The notes under the pieces are model-generated. The model was not told where the DNA came from, did not search any database, and saw nothing but the letters and a program-made list of their open reading frames with translations. This document shows, in pieces, positions 51,611 through 64,000 of a stretch of 64,000 bases of DNA (its first letter is position 1; each line of letters opens with the position of its first letter). Made by a program: the position numbers and the translations under genes. This DNA comes from Glycera tridactyla (Eukaryota): positions 94,054,001 through 94,118,000 of the forward strand of contig OZ286471.1 in assembly GCA_965644265.1 (NCBI GenBank), written 5' to 3'.

Positions 51611-53241
51611 TATACCCCGCTTTTGAAAAAGCTGGGTATAATAGTTTCACCTCCGGCGTCCGTACGTACGTACGTCCGTCCGCTCACATTTCATGCAATA
51701 ACTTTGAATTGGCTGGTCCAATTTTCATATAACTTTATAACTGTGATCTATGAAAAAATTGTATTCGAGAATTTGATTTTCGTACCCAAAGGTCAAAGGT
51801 CGAGGTCACAGGAGCTATTTATAGATTTTCTTATTTTACACTCTAACTCAAGTTAGCCTCAATGGATATGCACCAAACTTACATAAAGTAATGATCCAAT
51901 GTTGGGCCACCTCCCTTTTGATGCATGTGACCCTAGGTCAAAGGTCAAGGTCACAGGAGCTATTTATAGATTTTCCCATTTTACACTCTTACTCAAGCGC
52001 GCTTAGATGGATATGCACCAAACTTACTCAAAGTAATGACCTAATGGTAGGCCGCCTCCCTTTCGATGCATGTGACCCCAGGTAAAAGGTCGAGGTCACA
52101 GGAGCTATTTATAGATTTCCCCATTTTACACTCTAACTCAAGCGAGCTCTGATGAATATGCACCAAACCTACACAAGGTAATGACCTAATAGTAGGCCAC
52201 CTCTCTCTCGATGCATGTGACCCCAGGTCAAAAGTCAAGGTCACAGGAGCTATTTATAGATTTCCCCATTTTACACTCTAACTCAAGCCAGCTTTGATGG
52301 ATATGCACCAAACCTACACAAAATAATGACCTAATGGTTGGCCACCTCTCTTTCGATGCATGTGACCCCAGGTCAAAGGTCAAGGTCACAGGAGCTATTT
52401 ATAGATTTCCCCATTTTACACTCTAACTCAAGCTAGCTCTGATGGATATGCACCAAACTTACACAAAGTAATGACCTAATGGTAGGCCACCTCTCTTTCG
52501 ATGCATGTGACCCCAGGTCAAAGGTCAAGGTCACAGGAGCTATTTATAGATTTCCCCATTTTACACTCTGATTCAAGCCAGCTCTGATGGATATTCACCA
52601 AACTTACACATTGTAATGACTTGATGGTAGGCCACCTCCCTTTCGATGCATATGACCCCATGTCAAAGGTCAAGGTCACAGGAACTATTTATAGATTTTC
52701 CCATTTCACACTCTAACTCAAGCGAGATGGATATGCATCAAACTTACACAAAGTAATGACCTAATGGTAGGCCACCTCCTTTACGATGCATTTGATCCTA
52801 GGTCAAAGGTCAAGGTCACAGGAACTATTCATAAATTTTCTCATTTCACACTCCAGCTCAAGCTTGCATTGATTGATATGCACCCTGCGTCAAAGGTCAA
52901 GGCCATAGGAGCTATTTTTAAATTTCCGCATCTCACACAATCACTCAGGCTAGCATTGTTGGATGAAGATCAAACTGATCTGGGATGATCAAGCAATGTT
53001 ACAACATCTCTCTTACAATGCATGTGACCCTAAGTCATAGGTCAAGGTGAATGTTTTAGGTGCTACTACATATGTATTAGATTTTCTTATTCTACACAGT
53101 GATCCAGTGACTTATTACATAGCCAACCAAACATCTCAATGACCTTTTCAGATATGGGTTACCCACTGTGCTCCAGTGTGCGATATGGGTTACCCACTAT
53201 GCTCCCGTGTGCGGGGTATATTGCCCCTCTGTGGCCTTGTT
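51611..53241 (+). mobile_element. Second copy of the HINE element at 34611 (about 8 satellite units)
   Basis: Same termini, microsatellite and 145-bp core (unit starts at 51936, 52081, 52226, 52371, 52516); about 410 bp shorter. Confidence 0.85.
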
Positions 53242-53780: not shown

Positions 53781-54396
53781 ACTTGCAGCTTTGCACACTT
53801 GACTGCTGTGTCATGGTAATACACAGGCTCTGATTCACTCATATAACATAGGATTTCACTCACAAAGACGGATGACATTTGAGGAGATATATCAGGACCA
53901 ATATCCATCGTGATTAGCAACATTCATATTTTATACTTCGATGCATATTCCTGAGAATCATCTGCAAACAATTGGCACCACAATAGAAGGCGAAGCGACT
54001 GTAGGTGAATAGGCGCCTCATGGTAGGATCAAGAAGTTTGAGCAAAACAAAAGAGTGCACACACTAAATTGCTCATTTGAGTCGGTCATTGAGTGAATGA
54101 ATATCTGCACAAAACTTAGCATGAGAGGGACAGTGACTCTCGACATGTTTCCAAAGTTTGATGGAAAGTCTAGCTTCTTGCGAATCTTTCCAAGGATAAA
54201 CTTGTTCTTTCCCATTTCAAACACATCTATCATCCCGCCCCAAGCACCAAATCTGGAGGCACTTTGAGGATGATGGCTTGATGGGTCATGTACTCATGCC
54301 TGATTGATGATTCAAAATAAATCCTAATTCATCAATTCCTGAAATAGGCGAGGATTCCTAACACTGATTAAGTCCTCCATCTTTGTTTTTTTCCAG

Positions 54397-54552
54397 GGCC
54401 AGAAGTTTGATCAGTTGAATGAGCGTCTCAGCGAGTGGAGTCAAAATGGCCTTCCCAGCATGCCCGAGCTCGTCTGTATCGGACAACGAACCTTCAAAGA
54501 AAGCGATTTTGAGTTGGCGGGACACTGGGAGGATCTGGTACAAGGAGCAAGG
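54397..54552 (+). CDS. PLEKHG5: PLEKHG5-like RhoGEF exon: GQKFDQLNERLSEWSQNGLPSMPELVCIGQRTFKESDFELAGHWEDLVQGAR
   Basis: Acceptor ctttgtttttttccag|GGC and donor AGG|gtacgt, 52 codons, phase 0-0. Matches recalled PLEKHG5 motifs [21 protein letters not shown] and LEDSWRELIDG. Confidence 0.9.
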
Positions 54553-57500
54553 GTACGTAGAGAATATAGGGAAAATATCATAACAAGAAATCATGGGGCG
54601 GGACACTGGGAAGATCTGGTACAAGGAGCAGGGGTACGTAGAGAATATAGGGAAAATATCATAACAAGAAATCATGGGGCGGGACACTGGGAGGATCTGG
54701 TACAAGGAGCAGGGGTACGTAGAGAATATAGGGAAAATATCATAACAAGAAATCATGGGGCGGGACACTGGGAAGATCTGGTACAAGGAGCAGGGGTACG
54801 TAGAGAATATAGGGAAAATATCATAACAAGAAATCATGGGGCGGGACACTGGGAAGATCTGGTACAAGGAGCAGGGGTACGTAGAGAATAAAGGGAAAAT
54901 ATCATAACAAGAAATCATGGGGCGGGACACTGGGAAGATCTGGTACAAGGAGCGGGGGTACGTAGAGAATATAGGGAAAATATCATAACAAGAAATCATG
55001 GGGCGGGACACTGGGAGGATCTGGTACAAGGAGCAGGGGTACGTAGAGAATATAGGGGAAATATCATAACAAGAAATCATGGGCCGGGACACTGGGAAGA
55101 TCTGGTACAAGGAGCAGGGGTACGTAGAGAATATAGGGAAAATATCATAACAAGAAATCATGGGGCGGGACACTGGGAGGATCTGGTACAAGGAGCGGGG
55201 GTACATAGAGAATATAGGGAAAGTATCATAACAAGAAATCATGGGGCGGGACACTGGGAAGATCTGGTACAAGGAGCAGGGGTACGTAGAGAATATAGGG
55301 AAAATATCATAACAAGAAATCATGGGGCGGGACACTGGGAAGATCTGGTACAAGGAGCGGGGGTACGTAGAGAATATAGGGAAAATATCATAACAAGAAA
55401 TCATGGGGCGGGACACTGGGAGGATCTGGTACAAGGAGCAGGGGTACGTAGAGAATATAGGGAAAGTATCATAACAAGAAATCATGGGGCGGGACACTGG
55501 GAAGATCTGGTACAAGGAGCAGGGGTACGTAGAGAATATAGGGAAAATATCATGACAAGAAATCATGGGGCGGGACACTGGGAAGATCTGGTACAAGGAG
55601 CAGGGATACGTAGAGAATATAGGGAAAGTATCATAACAAGAAATCATGGGGCGGGACACTGGGAAGATCTGGTACAGGGAGCAGGGGTACGTAGAGAATA
55701 TAGGGAAAGTATCATAACAAGAAATCATGGGGCGGGACACTGGGAGGATCTGGTGCAAGGAGCAGGTGTACATAGAGAATATAGGGAAAATATCATAACA
55801 AGAAATCATGGGGCGGGACACTGGGAGGATCTGGTACAAGCAGCAGGGGTACGTAGAGAATATAGGGAAAATATCACAACAAGAAATCATGGGGCGGGAC
55901 ACTGGGAAGATCTAGTACAAGGAGCAGGGGTACGTAGAGAATATAGGGAAAATATCATAACAAGAAATCATGGGGCGGGACACTGGGAAGATCTGGTACA
56001 AGGAGCGGGGGTACATAGAGAATATAGGGAAAGTATCATAACAAGAAATCATGGGGCGGGACACTGGGAAGATCCGGTACAAGGAGCAGGGGTACGTAGA
56101 GAATAAAGGGAAAATATCATAACAAGAAATCATGGGGCGGGACACTGGGAAGATCTGGTACAAGGAGCAGGGGTATGTAGAGAATATAGGGAAAATATCA
56201 TAACAAGAAATCATGGGGCGGGACACTGGGAAGATCCGGTACAAGGAGCAGGGGTACGTAGAGAATAAAGGGAAAATATCATAACAAGAAATCATGGGGC
56301 GGGACACTGGGAGGATCTGGTACAAGGAGCAGGGGTACGTAGAGAATATAGGGAAAATATCATAACAAGAAATCATGGGGCGGGACACTGGGAAGATCTG
56401 GTACAAGGAGCGGGGGTACGTAGAGAATATAGGGAAAATATCATAACAAGAAATCATGGGGCGGGACACTGGGAAGATCTGGTACAGGGAGCAGGGGTAC
56501 ATAGAGAATATAGGGAAAATATCATAACAAGAAATCATGGGGCGGGACACTGGGAAGATCTGGTACAAGGAGCGGGGGTACGTAGAGAATATAGGGAAAA
56601 TATCATAACAAGAAATCATGGGGCGGGACACTGGGAGGATCTGGTACAAGGAGCAGAGGTACGTAGAGAATATAGGGAAAATATCATAACAAGAAATCAT
56701 GGGGCGGGACACTGGGAGGATCTGGTACAAGGAGCAGGTGTACGTAGAGAATATAGGGGGAATATCATAACAAAAAATCATGGGGCGGGACACTGGGAAG
56801 ATCTGGTACAAGGAGCAGGGGTACGTAGAGAATAAAGGGAAAATATCATAACAAGAAATCATGGGGCGGGACACTGGGAAGATCTGGTACAAGGAGCGGG
56901 GGTACGTAGAGAATATAGGGAAAATATCATAACAAGAAATCATGGGGCGGGACACTGGGAAGATCTGGTACAAGGAGCAGGGGTACGTAGAGAATAAAGG
57001 GAAAATATCATAACAAGAAATCATGGGGCGGGACACTGGGAAGATCCGGTACAAGGAGCAGGGATACGTAGAGAATAAAGGGAAAATATCATAACAAGAA
57101 ATCATGGGGCGGGACACTGGGAAGATCTGGTACAAGGAGCAGGGGTACGTAGAGAATATAGGGAAAATATCATAACAAGAAATCATGGGGCGGGACACTG
57201 GGAGGATCTGGTACAAGGAGCAGGGGTACGTAGAGAATATAGGGAAAATATCATAACAAGAAATCATGGGGCAGGACACTGGGAAGATCTGGTACAAGGA
57301 GCAGGGGTACGTAGAGAATATAGGGAAAATATCATAACAAGAAATCATGGGGCGGGACACTGGGAAGATCTGGTACAAGGAGCAGGGGTACGTAGAGAAT
57401 AAAGGGAAAATATCATAACAAGAAATCATGGGGCGGGACACTGGGAGGATCTGGTACAAGGAGCGGGGGTACGTAGAGAATATAGGGAAAATATCATAAC

Positions 57501-59412
57501 AAGAAATCATGGGGCGGGACACTGGGAGGATCTGGTACAAGGAGCAGGGGTACGTAGAGAATAAAGGGAAAATATCATAACAAGAAATCATGGGGCGGGA
57601 CATTTGGAGGATCTGGTACAAGGAGCAGGGGTACGTAGAGAATATAGGGAAAATATCATAACAAGAAATCATGGGGCGGGACACTGGGAGGATCTGGTAC
57701 AAGGAGCAGGGGTACGTAGAGAATAAAGGGAAAATATCATAACAAGAAATCATGGGGCGGGACACTGGGAGGATCTGGTACAAGGAGCAGGGGTACGTAG
57801 AGAATATAGGGAAAATATCATAACAAGAAATCATGGGGCGGGACACTGGGAGGATCTGGAACAAGGAGCAGGGGTACGTAGAGAATATAGGGAAAATATC
57901 ATAACAAGAAATCATGGGGCGGGACACTGGGAGGATCTGGTACAGGGAGCAGGGATACGTAGAGAATATAGGGAAAATATCATAACAAGAAATCATGGGG
58001 CGGGACACTGGGAAGATCTGGTACAAGGAGCAGGGATACGTAGAGAATATAGGGGAAATATCATAACAAGAAATCATGGGGCGGGACACTGGGAGGATCT
58101 GGTACAAGGAGCAGGGGTACGTAGAGAATATAGGGGAAATATCATAACAAGAAATCATGGGGCAGGACACTGGGAAGATCTGGTACAAGGAGCAGGGGTA
58201 CGTAGAGAATATAGGGAAAATATCATAACAAGAAATCATGGGGCGGGACACTGGGAGGATCTGGTACAAGGAGCGGGGGTACGTAGAGAATATAGGGAAA
58301 ATATCATAACAAGAAATCATGGGGTGGGACACTGGGAGGATCTGGTACAAGGAGCAGGGGTACGTAGAGAATAAAGGGAAAATATCATAACAAGAAATCA
58401 TGGGGCGGGACACTGGGAGGATCTGGTACAAGGAGCAGGGGTACATAGAGAATATAGGGAAAATATCATAACAAGAAATCATGGGGCGGGACACTGGGAG
58501 GATCTGGTACAAGGAGCGGGGGTACATAGAGAATAAAGGGAAAATATCATAACAAGAAATCATGGTGCGGGACACTGGGAGGATCTGGTACAAGGAGCAG
58601 GGGTACGTAGAGAATATAGGGAAAATATCATAACAAGAAATCATGGGGCGGGACACTGGGAGGATCTGGTACAAGGAGCAGGGGTACATAGAGAATAAAG
58701 GGAAAATATCATAACAAGAAATCATGGGGCGGGACACTGGGAGGATCGGTACAAGGAGCGGGGGTACGTAGAGAATATAGGGAAAATATCATAACAAGAA
58801 ATCATGGGGCGGGACACTGGGAGGATCTGGTACAAGGAGCAGGGGTACGTAGAAGTGGCGGGGGTCTCTCATCACCATCGCCATCGTTGTTGTCGTTGCA
58901 GAACAGAGTAAATCTGCATGGGCTAATATGTCACAATTACCACCACCAATAATAGCTATGGATATGGAGAATATAGGGAAAATATCATAACAAGAAATCA
59001 TGGGGCGGGACACTGGGAAGATCTGGTACAAGGAGCAGGGGTACGTAGAGAATAAAGGGAAAATATCATAACAAGAAATCATGGGGCGGGACACTGGGAA
59101 GATCTGGTACAAGGAGCGGGGGTACGTAGAGAATATAGGGAAAATATCATAACAAGAAATCATGGGGTGGGACACTGGGAGGATCTGGTACAAGGAGCGG
59201 GGGTACGTAGAGAATATAGGGAAAATATCATAACAAGAAATCATGGGGCGGGACACTGGGAAGATCTGGTACAAGGAGCAGGGGTACATAGAGAATATAG
59301 GGAAAATATCATAACAAGAAATCATGGGGCGGGACACTGGGAGGATCTGGTACAAGGAGCGGGGGTACGTAGAGAATATAGGGAAAATATCATAACAAGA
59401 AATCATGGGGCG
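54516..59412 (+). repeat. Minisatellite, 81-bp unit = last 37 nt of the exon + donor + first 44 nt of the intron, about 59 copies
   Basis: The unit GGCGGGACACTGGGAGGATCTGGTACAAGGAGCAGGG|GTACGTAGAG... starts inside exon 54397-54552. Confidence 0.97.
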
Positions 59413-59867
59413 TGGAGAATATAGGGAAAATATAATGTATGCTCCCTGATTAGCACCCAGGTGGTTATTTGTTTGATATTCCCTGATGGGCGATAGTGAG
59501 GTATTTTGGCAAACATATGCCTTGAGTCTGGTCTGAATCCTGATACAACGATATGAAATGTTATTTTCAACAAAAAGCACATCATTCATTGAAACTGCTG
59601 AAAAAGCAGCGGCCGGCACGTGTATTGCCTTCAAGCGATATCTAGAAAGAGAGATCTTCACAAGAAATTGCACTTCCCTTGCGCCAAATACAGCTAGAGA
59701 GAAAAGATAATGTGGAAGCCTGAATGGTTAGTTAACACCCAATCTGAGATGAGATCGCTGAATGTCTGACTCAGCCTCGCTTACACACGAATAATTCCAC
59801 TTGTATCTTTACTAATCTTCAAACTATCTCTGAAACCATCGCTAAATGTACATATATTACCTCACAG

Positions 59868-59963
59868 AACCTGACAAAGAAGGAACGGACGCAGCAGGAA
59901 CGAATCTGGGAGATTCTGAAAACGGAGGTGGAGTACATTAAACGACTTGGCGTGATACGTGAT
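59868..59963 (+). CDS. PLEKHG5: PLEKHG5-like RhoGEF exon, start of DH domain: NLTKKERTQQERIWEILKTEVEYIKRLGVIRD
   Basis: Acceptor attacctcacag|AAC and donor GAT|gtaagt, 32 codons. Classic DH helix-1 motif QExIWEL(I)xxTExxYIxxL; recalled PLEKHG5 sequence is [29 protein letters not shown]. Confidence 0.93.
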
Positions 59964-62170
59964 GTAAGTATATCCTTCAACTTAACCCGCTGAATTAACA
60001 CTCGGGAAATTCTGTTGATTGAGCTGTTGAGCTTGTACGGCTGCCCTTCAAAAGCTGGCAGAAATGGGGGAGATAGATATAGATAGATTGTTACTCTTCA
60101 TTTTGATTTTCATGATTTCAAACAATCACACATTTGTTTTTACTGAGCATATACGGGGTGGACAAATACCTACAGTCAGACAGACACCCAGATACCCCCG
60201 TTGACCATTCAGTCAAATACAGGTACTAATTTTTGAGAGCTGTGGTCTGTTTCATTGAATAGTTGAATCTGTCTTAAGCAGCCACTTTCTGATTCTTGGC
60301 TAGGGCATTTTTCACTGTATTATGGGACCACCTGTATTAAGGGACCACTTTAAGTTTTCCGAGGGTGGTTACTTATATTACAGGTCATACTGTATCACAA
60401 TGAGAAGGTTCCAAATTGAGGCCTTGGATGCAAAGTTGGGAAGAAACAGAGACGGGGGGAGGGGGGGGGGCATAATAACACATCATCATGATGTAAGATG
60501 TGTCTGACGTTGGCATGGTTCTGTCTTCATTACGTCGTCGTCGTCGTCGTCACAGTTAATGAGCTGAGATTAATGGTCTTAATAGAGCAGAGTGACCTGT
60601 GATGGATCAATCAATCAAGCAATAATTAGAATGAACATGATAGTAATAAGGACAACAAGGAGAAAACCAACAGCAAATATTGAGTTAACAACACCAACAA
60701 CCAGCACAGCAACAACCTGATCATCCTCATCCTTCTTTTGTTGTCGATGTCATGATGATGATCATCATCAGCATCAGCATTGTCATTGTCATCGTCATCG
60801 CCATCACCATCATCATCACCATCGCCATCGTTGTTGTCGTTGCAGAACAGAGTAAATCTGCATGGGCTAATATGTCACAATTACCACCACCAATAATAGC
60901 CAAGTACCTATTCACACCTGAGTGAAGAGGAGTGGTGGGGCATAATGGTTTTATTCAGTGACCTCCATACAGGTATATCCTATGTGAGAAGCACAGATTA
61001 GATTTATGTAATGGCGCAGCAGGTCAAGTATTGACTGGCCAATGATGGCCGATTAAGGTCACCCATTCAACTGGGAGCCCCCCTCGGTGTTGCATAACAA
61101 TACTGTGCAGTGGAAGCTAGCATGTGTGCAGGTCTGTCCATGTATATGTGCTGAGATGGTCGGAGAGTATGATACAGTCAAACCTGCGATGAGAGACCCC
61201 CTGACAAGAGACCACTTCCACTTCCACATAGCATGACAGCTCCTCTATTTGTCATAGTTATAGACCACCTCTTCTGAGAGACCACTTTTCAGTGACATCT
61301 AGGGTGGTCTCACATCGCAAGTTTCACTTCCTCACAATCAGTGACTGTCATTTTCTGCTGACGATTCCTCACACGGCGCGCAGAGTGTCAAATGTGAATC
61401 CCAGTACAGTGAAATCTGTGACGAGATCCCCTGACAAGAGACGACTTCCGACATGCAGAGCAGCCTTTTTTATTTGACTTAGCCAAATATACCTCGAATA
61501 TACCTAGAGATAACCTCGTTTGAGTGGTCACTTTTCGGTGACATTTATGACAGTCCCGCGTCGCAGGTTTCATTGCGTCTCATTGGTCAGCTTTTTTTCG
61601 TAATACTCATTTTTTGCTGATGATCCTTCACGCTAGTGACAAATATAATCACCAATACTTCATAAGATTTTGTGGCATACATTTGTGCTCAGTATTCCTC
61701 AATACCGTTGGAACCTATAGGTGAGGGTAAAACAAGTGATGATCCCTACAGATTTACACAAATCCATTGATCCATCCGTCTATTTCCCATTTTCACATTC
61801 ACTTCTACTATCTAGCAATCCTGGATGTATCACAAACTGATACATGTAATGTGTTTCCTCATTTCAAGTACAGTCAAACCTATCACAAACTGATAATGTG
61901 TTTCCTCATTTCAAGTACAGTCAAACATGTCTATGAAGACTGCCTTCGGTCGCATAAAAAAGTGGCCTTCATATACAGGTGGTCTTCATAGGATGGTTAT
62001 TTACTGTTGAAAATGCTACCACAGTCACAGCTCAAGGTGGTCTTTATGGAGAGGTGGTCTCTAGAGCTGGTTTGACTGTACTGCGCTTTGCTAAAAATGA
62101 AGCATTGCTATCAGGCTTGAGTGTCAGCTTCTATCCAGTTACGTAGTTAGATATGCCATCATCATGTTCA

Positions 62171-62345
62171 GGTAGAGGTGTTTCTGAACTATCAGCTACT
62201 TTCACCTTTAGGTTCCCCATCATCTTGTGTTCAGGGTTTGTGTTGGTGATGTCTGCAGGGGACAGATCATCTGGCTTTCATTGACCAGGAATACATGGCA
62301 TACCTTGTCCCCTGGGTTGATAGATGCCATGAAACTTCAATCAAT
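62171..62345 (+). mobile_element. SINE-like dispersed repeat (GGTAGAGGTGTGTCTGAACTGTCAGCTAC...CCATTAAACCTCAA tail); other copies near 6850, 10650, 11900, 16605, 17580
   Basis: Collinear similarity among six loci, with an (AAAC)n or (TCAA)n tail in some copies. Class inferred from the tail only. Confidence 0.55.
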
Positions 62346-62620
62346 CACAGTGATATAAATGTGAAACTTGTCCTAATCATAAGGCTGGGGAATGGGGGGC
62401 AAAAACTGGCTGCTTAGGTCGAGTCCATGCGTGAATTATAGTGGAAAATGCTCGGGCACGATTATCAAAAATGTATTATCTTGGGCAACTTCTTGCTGAG
62501 TAAAAGTCCTGCTAGTAAAATGTTCTTTCCCTGTCATTTTGAACGGGTTATGGCTTCACCTGAGATGATCCTGAAGTGTATTCCATGCATTTTCTCGCGT
62601 CTCTTAGTCATGTTTGACAG

Positions 62621-64000
62621 GATTCAGAAAGTCTCTATCTGTCATTATTGTTGTTTTGTTTGTTTCAGCTTTTTGTCTGCTGTTTATACAACCTCCAGAA
62701 TGAACAGATTCTTAATGATTCAGAAAGTCTCTATCTGTCATTATTGTTGTTTTGTTTGTTTCAGCTTTTTGTCTGCTGTTTATACAACCTCCAGAATGAA
62801 CAGATTCTTAATGATTCAGAAGGTCTCTATCTGTCATTATTGTTGTTTTGTTTGTTTCAGCTTTTTGTCTGCTGTTTATACAACCTCCAGAATGAACAGA
62901 TTCTTAATGATTCAGAAGGTCTCTATCTGTCATTATTGTTGTTTTGTTTGTTTCAGCTTTTTGTCTGCTGTTTATACAACCTCCAGAATGAACAGATTCT
63001 TAATGATTCAGAAGGTCTCTATCTGTCATTATTGTTGTTTTGTTTGTTTCAGCTTTTTGTCTGCTGTTTATACAACCTCCAGAATGAACAGATTCTTAAT
63101 GATTCAGAAGGTCTCTATCTGTCATTATTGTTGTTTTGTTTGTTTCAGCTTTTTGTCTGCTGTTTATACAACCTCCAGAATGAACAGATTCTTAATGATT
63201 CAGAAGGTCTCTATCTGTCATTATTGTTGTTTTGTTTGTTTCAGCTTTTTGTCTGCTGTTTATACAACCTCCAGAATGAACAGATTCTTAATGATTCAGA
63301 AGGTCTCTATCTGTCATTATTGTTGTTTTGTTTGTTTCAGCTTTTTGTCTGCTGTTTATACAACCTCCAGAATGAACAGATTCTTAATGATTCAGAAGGT
63401 CTCTATCTGTCATTATTGTTGTTTTGTTTGTTTCAGCTTTTTGTCTGCTGTTTATACAACCTCCAGAATGAACAGATTCTTAATGATTCAGAAGGTCTCT
63501 ATCTGTCATTATTGTTGTTTTGTTTGTTTCAGCTTTTTGTCTGCTGTTTATACAACCTCCAGAATGAACAGATTCTTAATGATTCAGAAGGTCTCTATCT
63601 GTCATTATTGTTGTTTTGTTTGTTTCAGCTTTTTGTCTGCTGTTTATACAACCTCCAGAATGAACAGATTCTTAATGATTCAGAAGGTCTCTATCTCTCA
63701 TTATTGTTGTTTTGTTTGTTTCAGCTTTTTGTCTGCTGTTTATACAACCTCCAGAATGAACAGATTCTTAATGATTCAGAAGGTCTCTATCTCCCATTAT
63801 TGTTGCTTTGTTTGTTTCAGCTTTTTGTCTGCTGTTTATACAACCTCCAGAATGAACAGATTCTTAATGATTCAGAAGGTCTCTATCTGTCATTATTGTT
63901 GTTTTGTTTATTTCAGCTTTTTGTCTGCTGTTTATACAACCTCCAGAATGAACAGATTCTTAATGATTCAGAAGGTCTCTATCTCTCATTATTGTTGTTT
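62621..64000 (+). repeat. Minisatellite, 96-bp unit = 48 nt intron end with acceptor + 48 nt exon start, at least 14.4 copies, running off the window end
   Basis: GATTCAGAA recurs every 96 bp from 62621, and each unit contains ...TTTGTTTCAG|CTTTTTGTCTGCTGT. Confidence 0.97.
62669..62719 (+). CDS. PLEKHG5: First of at least 14 tandem copies of the next DH-domain exon start, LFVCCLYNLQNEQILND. The functional copy is probably the last one, beyond the window end.
   Basis: Acceptor gttgttttgtttgtttcag|CTT, phase 0, continuing ...VIRD. Matches recalled PLEKHG5 LFLCCLLNLQESGLLCE. No canonical donor follows any copy inside the window. Confidence 0.75.

What the first reader, a model, noticed from the sequence alone, without database searches (positions are those of the whole stretch)
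54397..64000. Splice-junction-anchored minisatellites in two consecutive RhoGEF introns
Seen: two unrelated arrays each copy one splice junction. The 81-bp donor-spanning array keeps the intact exon at its 5' edge. The 96-bp acceptor-spanning array must keep it at its 3' edge. Both units are multiples of 3, so dozens of frame-preserving decoy splice sites flank the DH domain without breaking the CDS. Known: tandem duplications across splice sites can create introns or alter exons in individual cases. Inference: in this genome splice junctions may be repeatedly amplified and tolerated, giving a VNTR-dependent splice-choice system or an intron-growth mechanism.
Basis: partly seen in the sequence, partly recalled or inferred. 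Interest (0 to 1): 0.82.

Follow-up and report, generated by a model that had tools for sequence, protein, structure and literature searches.

The report
Splice-junction minisatellites in RhoGEF introns
Two introns of an invertebrate RhoGEF gene are swollen by tandem repeats that each copy a splice junction plus a piece of exon; this repeat type is already known as a "mirage" in amphioxus and from human F7, and the transcript assemblies available show only the normal splice.

Summary
An 81-bp array (about 59 copies, 54516-59412) repeats the last 37 nt of one exon plus its donor. A 96-bp array (at least 14 copies, 62621 to the window end) repeats an acceptor plus the first 48 nt of the next-but-one exon. 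Exon limits rest on homology to RhoGEF genes of relatives and on spliced contigs from four public runs.

In one relative the same two introns sit at the same positions, measure 210 and 162 bp, and hold no repeats. The arrays are therefore lineage-specific growth of old introns, not new introns.

In all four runs the contig carrying the middle exon matches the 81-bp unit only over its exon-derived part. By depth arithmetic it carries about one copy of the 48-nt exon start. The authentic sites are the ones seen in use.

41% of the window is minisatellite, so two of five junctions inside arrays is what chance coverage gives.

This is a new member of a known kind: amphioxus "mirages" and the human F7 intron 7 VNTR. 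This scan has already noted the same thing at other loci of this genome. The proposed VNTR-dependent splice-choice system is not supported, although rare decoy use cannot be excluded with contigs. The 3' edge of the 96-bp array lies outside the window.

The parts
54397..54554 (+). Exon E1 of the RhoGEF gene (52 codons, phase 0 at both ends). It ends ...GCAAGG before GTACGT.
   Evidence: Sequence. tblastn matches E1 of relatives in L001, L002/L003 and L005/L006 (E 1e-9 to 1e-13). The spliced E1+E2 aligns without a gap to L001, where the two exons are fused. The acceptor at 54396/54397 is inferred from sequence only.
54516..58853 (+). 81-bp minisatellite, block 1 (53.6 copies). The unit is the last 37 nt of E1 plus the donor and 44 nt of intron. 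The first copy is the authentic exon end.
   Evidence: TRF. Per-copy table and donor census: 1 real AGG|GTACGT, 41 GGG|GTACGT, 8 with A at +5, 4 with GT changed to AT.
58854..58966 (+). 113-nt interruption of the array. 88 nt of it (58870-58957) are identical to 60817-60904 in the next intron.
   Evidence: Alignment A1.
58967..59412 (+). 81-bp minisatellite, block 2 (5.5 copies).
   Evidence: TRF. Short contigs of runs X5 and X6 lie on 59263-59373 and 59295-59401, crossing a unit-to-unit junction. This independently confirms the tandem arrangement.
59413..59867 (+). Unique 3' part of intron 1, ending in the acceptor CACAG.
   Evidence: Sequence. Contig matches start at E2.
59868..59963 (+). 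Exon E2 (32 codons), the start of the DH/RhoGEF domain.
   Evidence: One contig per run (284, 652, 3754 and 1689 nt) matches exactly 59867-59963 and nothing adjacent. Pfam RhoGEF profile positions 2-20, E 0.038. Homologue P0001 reaches PF00621 at 2e-30.
59964..62620 (+). Non-array part of intron 2 (donor GTAAGT), holding dispersed repeats.
   Evidence: Sequence. Very high contig depth at 61160-61400 and 61880-62360. No Rfam or tRNA match.
62621..64000 (+). 96-bp minisatellite (at least 14.4 copies, cut by the window end). The unit is 48 nt of intron 3' end with pyrimidine tract and CAG, plus the first 48 nt of exon E3 (LFVCCLYNLQNEQILN).
   Evidence: TRF. Per-copy differences. The E3 peptide matches relatives at the same acceptor position.

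Best explanation
These are two independent 'mirage'-type minisatellites.

Origin. In each case a small tandem duplication straddled a splice junction of a RhoGEF gene: the donor of E1, and the acceptor of E3. It then expanded, by replication slippage or unequal exchange, into an array inside an old and originally short intron. The arrays are by-products of a genome in which minisatellites arise very often. Their main effect is intron growth.

Why they are tolerated. A junction-spanning duplication always leaves one intact exon end at the outer edge of the array, and the splicing machinery uses that one. On the donor side this is the most upstream copy, the one continuous with the exon. That is what was shown experimentally for the human F7 intron 7 repeat. 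On the acceptor side the copy used is presumably the last one, which alone is followed by the rest of the exon and its real donor.

Shown: the arrays, the junction content of the units, the conserved intron positions, and canonical transcript contigs. Inferred: the slippage origin, the exon-definition or scanning reason for site choice, and use of the last acceptor.
For: - Arrays and unit anatomy.
- Relatives: L005/L006 have E1, E2 and E3 with introns at the same positions and phase, 210 and 162 bp long, and no tandem repeat there.
- RNA, donor side: in X1, X2, X5 and X6 the E2-bearing contig covers 59355 but not 59325. X1/X2 total depth is 3.5/3.62 at 59355 and 0 at 59325. In X5/X6 the depth at 59355 equals main contig plus unit contigs, and at 59325 unit contigs only. 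These contigs extend 117-1009 nt upstream of E2, so the E1 part is in the authentic exon context.
- RNA, acceptor side: the depth in the E3 bins corresponds to about 47-50 nt per contig, that is one exon part, while the contigs run 70-3213 nt further downstream.
- Microhomology at the left edge of the 96-bp array: intron ACAG-GATTC against exon ACAGATTC...AAT|GAT.
- 41% of the window is minisatellite.
- Literature: amphioxus mirages with normal splicing (PMC3087553, PMC3902484). In F7 IVS7 the most upstream donor is used (PMC1557585).
Against: - The runs are Logan contigs, which drop rare variants. Low-level use of decoy sites cannot be excluded.
- The runs' RNA nature is inferred from the spliced contigs, not recorded.
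- The pieces on the E1 tail and E3 head were not listed individually. Their extent is derived from depth figures.
- About 44 decoy donors are as good as the real one apart from position -3 (G instead of A). All 14 visible acceptors are complete, so why they stay silent is not shown here.
- Both periods being divisible by 3 and both units being stop-free in frame has a joint chance of about 0.01 under a simple post-hoc null. Pure neutrality does not predict this.
- If the intron 2 insertions are older than the array, two seeds both hitting junctions has a chance of only about 0.02.
Confidence: 0.8

Rival explanations
1. The arrays act as a splice-choice device. Some decoy donors or acceptors are used, giving isoforms with in-frame 27-aa or 32-aa insertions at the start of the DH domain. 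The isoform ratio depends on array length.
For: Units are multiples of 3 and stop-free in consensus. 41 decoy donors share all six intron positions with the real one. All 14 visible acceptors keep the tract and AG. In humans, tandem-repeat length is associated with splicing variation (PMC10078293, abstract).
Against: The transcript contigs of four runs from two studies show only the canonical junction context. 13 of 57 81-bp units have an in-frame TAA and one has a frameshift, so the frame is not being kept open. The insertions would fall in the first helix region of the DH domain, which has no such insert in any relative.
Confidence: 0.1
2. Junction-straddling duplications arise more often than elsewhere because of a mutational bias linked to exon edges or splicing. 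The arrays are then not neutral random seeds.
For: Two of two large arrays in this gene segment straddle junctions. The chance is about 0.02 if introns already had their present non-array length. Earlier notes of this scan report many such arrays in this genome, and one estimate of a threefold excess (unchecked).
Against: With ancestral intron lengths like those of the relative (210 and 162 bp), 55% and 74% of random 81- and 96-bp duplications touching the intron would span a junction. Simple coverage (41%) already predicts 2 of 5 junctions inside arrays. Readers notice junction arrays more readily, which is an ascertainment bias.
Confidence: 0.07
3. Assembly artefact: the junctions are single-copy and the arrays were created or inflated by the assembler.
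For: Copy number was not verified with genomic long reads. An 88-nt block identical to sequence 1.9 kb downstream sits inside the 81-bp array.
Against: Copies differ at many sites in a mixed pattern typical of real minisatellites. Contigs of independent runs X5 and X6 cross a unit-to-unit junction. The same kind of array occurs throughout the window.
Confidence: 0.03

Closest known systems
Amphioxus 'mirage' minisatellites (Adh3, globins BflGb6/BflGb9, troponin C, PGBD5)
   Same: Tandem minisatellite-like duplications whose unit spans an exon-intron boundary. Both 5' and 3' boundaries can be affected, most copies carry AG/GT signals, and regular splicing is kept (PMC3087553, PMC3902484).
   Different: The arrays here are much longer: about 59 and at least 14 copies, against 2-6 in the globin examples. 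The organism is not stated to be a cephalochordate, and earlier scan notes call the genome annelid-like. Length or somatic instability was not tested here.
Human F7 intron 7 37-bp VNTR
   Same: The first repeat element spans the exon-intron boundary, so the real donor is followed by identical pseudo-donors that stay silent. The most upstream site is chosen (PMC1557585).
   Different: F7 has few copies, this array about 59. The real donor here differs from the decoys at position -3. Site choice was tested by mutagenesis in F7 and only observed in contigs here. No acceptor-side counterpart is described in F7.
Intron gain by tandem genomic duplication (AGGT model)
   Same: A tandem duplication that duplicates splice signals inside a gene (PMC3265369, PMC4974935).
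   Different: No intron was created here. Both introns exist at the same positions in a relative, and the intron ends are not copies of the flanking exon sequence.
Human splicing-associated tandem repeats (spl-TRs)
   Same: Intronic tandem repeats near splice sites that could influence splicing (PMC10078293).
   Different: Those are statistical length-splicing associations. No length-dependent effect has been shown here.

Membership tests
Mirage minisatellite (tandem repeat of an exon-intron boundary) | Head-to-tail tandem array with a minisatellite-size unit | tested here: met
   81 bp in 53.6 + 5.5 copies, and 96 bp in at least 14.4 copies.
Mirage minisatellite (tandem repeat of an exon-intron boundary) | Unit contains exon sequence plus the adjoining splice signal and intron sequence | tested here: met
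   37 nt of E1 plus donor plus 44 nt of intron. 48 nt of intron with tract and AG plus 48 nt of E3. Exon limits come from homologues and spliced contigs.
Mirage minisatellite (tandem repeat of an exon-intron boundary) | The authentic exon end lies at the outer edge of the array, continuous with the rest of the exon | tested here: inconclusive
   Met for the 81-bp array, whose first copy is continuous with E1. The 3' edge of the 96-bp array lies beyond the window end.
Mirage minisatellite (tandem repeat of an exon-intron boundary) | Regular splicing of the mRNA is kept | tested here: met
   E2-bearing contigs in four runs show canonical context on both sides. Rare isoforms are not excluded.
Mirage minisatellite (tandem repeat of an exon-intron boundary) | Length polymorphism or instability between alleles | not tested
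   Needs genomic long reads of several individuals.
RhoGEF (Dbl-homology domain, PF00621) gene | Pfam PF00621 match above the gathering score | tested here: inconclusive
   Only the first 32 residues of the domain lie in a complete exon of the window: 14.6 bits against a cut-off of 27.6, E 0.038, profile positions 2-20. The homologue P0001:1-340, found with E2, scores 106.6 bits. Its nearest solved DH domains are ARHGEF1/11/12 and AKAP13.
Intron gained by tandem duplication | Intron absent at that position in relatives, with ends derived from duplicated exon sequence | tested here: not met
   L005/L006 have both introns at the same position and phase. L001 and L002/L003 lack intron 1, but that is equally explained by loss.
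VNTR-regulated alternative splicing | Isoform ratio depends on repeat number | not testable with these tools
   Needs matched genotypes and long-read cDNA.

The most novel reading that the evidence does not exclude
In this non-cephalochordate lineage, tandem arrays are seeded at splice junctions more often than intron length and array density predict. In-frame, stop-free units are preferentially retained because decoy sites are used at a low level, giving array-length-dependent protein isoforms with inserts at the start of the DH domain.
Probability: 0.08. Interest if true: 0.6.

Novelty: new member of a known kind. Interest (0 to 1): 0.3.

Why it matters
Each such locus is a natural experiment in splice-site choice. 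About 44 near-perfect donors and at least 13 complete spare acceptors are ignored in favour of the copy that is continuous with the exon. The locus also shows directly how minisatellite expansion can turn a roughly 200-bp intron into one of 5 kb. As a single locus it adds little to what is known from amphioxus and human F7. The value lies in the genome-wide density that this scan keeps meeting, which would deserve one proper statistical and long-read cDNA study rather than more single cases.

Tried and rejected
- **Word-index protein search.** I searched with the stop-free stretch 54397-54888, region 1-52, to catch translated transcripts of this species. No candidate was found. This is uninformative because of the length filter.
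- **Upstream exons.** I ran all open stretches of the window through tblastn against the relatives' loci. Only E1 and E2 are conserved, so I could not test whether the other arrays upstream (30, 145, 64, 75 bp) also touch junctions of this gene.
- **Coding repeat.** I rejected this because of the TAA in 13 of 57 units, one 80-nt unit, the direct E1-E2 contigs, and the absence of any insert in relatives.
- **Intron creation.** I rejected this because the introns are shared with L005/L006.
- **Non-coding RNA or SINE as source of the units or of the high-depth repeats in intron 2.** No Rfam or tRNA match was found.
- **Gradient of divergence along the 81-bp array.** None was found: mean differences are 2.5-2.9 at all lags.
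- **Excess of periods divisible by 3 among the window's arrays.** 8 of 17, p 0.17, not significant.
- **The repeat finder** added nothing beyond TRF.
Full report
**Observation.** Tandem Repeats Finder confirms both arrays.
- The 81-bp array runs 54516-58853 (53.6 copies, 96% matches) and resumes at 58967-59412 (5.5 copies).
- The 96-bp array runs from 62621 to the window end (14.4 copies, 99% matches).
- A motif search finds copies of the 81-bp unit's donor region and of the 96-bp unit's acceptor region only inside their own arrays, nowhere else in the window.
- The masked N runs all lie upstream of 46200. I left them untouched.

**Gene and exons.** Three + strand exons are involved.
- E1 is 54397-54554 and ends ...GCAAGG before GTACGT.
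- E2 is 59868-59963, with CACAG before it and GTAAGT after it.
- E3 starts after each TTTCAG of the 96-bp unit.
- E2 gives a weak Pfam RhoGEF match to profile positions 2-20 (E 0.038).
- A full-library search with E2 finds RhoGEF proteins. P0001:1-340 scores 106.6 bits on PF00621. Its nearest solved DH domains are ARHGEF1/11/12 and AKAP13.
- The spliced translation E1+E2+E3 aligns without gaps to relatives.

**Relatives' gene structure.**
- In the metagenomic contig L001, E1 and E2 are one exon. Intron 2 is 326 bp and E3 is a 51-nt micro-exon.
- In L005/L006 (assemblies GCA_013332975.1 and GCA_029980185.1) all three exons are present, with introns at exactly the same positions and phase. Intron 1 is 210 bp and intron 2 is 162 bp, and TRF finds no repeat there.
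- Both introns are therefore old. The arrays are lineage-specific additions, and 4745 of the 5313 nt of intron 1 are array.

**Anatomy of the units.** The 81-bp unit is the last 37 nt of E1 plus the donor and 44 nt of intron.

| 57 in-register copies | Number |
|---|---|
| AGG\|GTACGT (the authentic first copy) | 1 |
| GGG\|GTACGT | 41 |
| Other intact variants | 3 |
| A at +5 | 8 |
| GT changed to AT | 4 |

- Thirteen units carry an in-frame TAA, the first in copy 5, and one unit is 80 nt. Only decoy donors 2-5 could be used without meeting a stop.
- The copies show no divergence gradient.
- The 96-bp unit is 48 nt of intron (branch-point region, pyrimidine tract, CAG) plus the first 48 nt of E3. 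All 14 visible copies are complete and stop-free in frame.
- The left edge of the 96-bp array shows microhomology: intron ACAG-GATTC against exon ACAGATTC...AAT followed by GAT. This fits a slippage origin.
- Relatives continue E3 with GAT or GAG after the shared AAT. The true exon is therefore expected at the far end of the array, outside the window.

**Transcripts.** One search for runs and one laying of contigs were available.
- Eight runs from two studies hold E2 words. I laid X1 and X2 (organism A) and X5 and X6 (organism B) on 59240-62830.
- In each run one contig (284, 652, 3754 and 1689 nt) matches exactly 59867-59963 and nothing adjacent. E2 is therefore spliced at both edges, and these runs contain RNA.
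- The same contigs extend 117-1009 nt upstream of E2. Even so, they cover position 59355, in the exon-derived part of the last 81-bp unit, and not 59325 or 59318, in its intron-derived part.
- In X1/X2 the total depth is 3.5/3.62 at 59355 and 0 at 59325. In X5/X6 the depths equal main contig plus short unit contigs at 59355, and unit contigs alone at 59325.
- The mRNA therefore has the E1 tail in its authentic context, not behind another repeat unit. The first donor is the one seen in use.
- Downstream, the depth in the E3 bins divided by contig depth gives 47-50 nt, while the contigs run 70-3213 nt further. That is one copy of the exon start followed by sequence not in the stretch.
- This last step is arithmetic on depth figures, because the pieces themselves were not listed.
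- Short contigs in X5 and X6 (59263-59373, 59295-59401) cross a donor unspliced and cross a unit-to-unit junction. This fits intron RNA from a 59-copy repeat, and it independently confirms the tandem arrangement.
- Contigs drop rare variants, so minor decoy use is not excluded.

**Chance.**
- 41% of the unmasked window is minisatellite. Two of five junctions inside arrays is what coverage alone predicts.
- For the seeds, a random 81- or 96-bp duplication touching an intron of 210 or 162 bp spans a junction in 55% or 74% of cases. With the present non-array lengths (568 and 2657 bp) the figures are 25% and 7%.
- The coincidence therefore ranges from unremarkable (about 0.4) to mildly unlikely (about 0.02), depending on the order of events.
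- Both periods divisible by 3 and both units stop-free has a post-hoc joint chance of about 0.01. I cannot explain this and I do not over-read it. Among the window's large arrays, 8 of 17 periods are divisible by 3 (p 0.17).

**Comparison with what is known.**
- Ebner et al. [quoted passage not shown] They occur at both 5' and 3' boundaries, with splice signals in most copies, and with normal splicing.
- PMC3902484 adds PGBD5 and troponin C.
- Borensztajn et al. (PMC1557585) show that the human F7 intron 7 VNTR, whose first element spans the exon boundary, leaves functional pseudo-donors silent because the most upstream site is selected.
- The present arrays meet the structural definition and the normal-splicing feature. 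Instability was not tested.
- Intron gain by tandem duplication (PMC3265369, PMC4974935) does not apply, because the introns pre-exist.

**Earlier notes of this scan.** The scan has already noted the same phenomenon at other loci of this genome and on this very stretch. The "mirage" label and the F7 lead came from those notes, and I checked them against the papers. Their genome-wide statements, such as the threefold excess, remain untested here.

**Verdict.** The mechanism is ordinary minisatellite expansion seeded across splice junctions and tolerated by use of the exon-continuous site. It is a new member of a known kind, and the regulatory reading is not supported.

Noticed in passing
window 58870-58957 and 60817-60904: An 88-nt block inside the 81-bp array is 100% identical to a block in the next intron, 1.9 kb downstream. 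This could be a recent template switch, a small dispersed repeat or an assembly join.
   Followed up: partly
window 34810-36626 and 51790-53213: The same 145-bp array, followed by the same 31-bp repeat, occurs twice 17 kb apart. It is a dispersed element with an internal minisatellite, or a segmental duplication.
   Followed up: no
whole window: 41% of the unmasked window is minisatellite (period of 10 or more, at least 3 copies). Several arrays exceed 3 kb, for example 69 bp x 53 at 20935-24606 and 51 bp x 64 at 25653-28909. Whether these also touch exon edges was not examined.
   Followed up: partly
window 61160-61400 and 61880-62360: Dispersed repeats in intron 2 attract contig depth of 1e3 to 1e5 in all four runs, with many rearranged joints. 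There is no Rfam or tRNA match. This is probably an abundant transcribed mobile element family carrying the GGTGGTCT/AGACCACC motif seen elsewhere in the window.
   Followed up: partly
L001 461-832 and 1138-1188; L002 266-478: Relatives in marine metagenome contigs lack intron 1, so E1 and E2 are fused. L001 has E3 as a 51-nt micro-exon, whereas L005 has a long E3. Intron positions in this RhoGEF family are fluid.
   Followed up: partly
L004 1001-11085: The gene model P0001 (2022 aa) comes from assembly GCA_015706575.1, an accession cited in echinoderm papers. It strings together seven tandem, nearly intron-less RhoGEF paralogues. It is probably a fused annotation of a tandem gene family.
   Followed up: no
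window 47314-48286: The 64-bp array unit contains an acceptor-like TTTCAG, then 24 nt, then a donor-like AAG|GTTATT. It could be another junction-derived array of the same gene's upstream part. No exon evidence was available.
   Followed up: no
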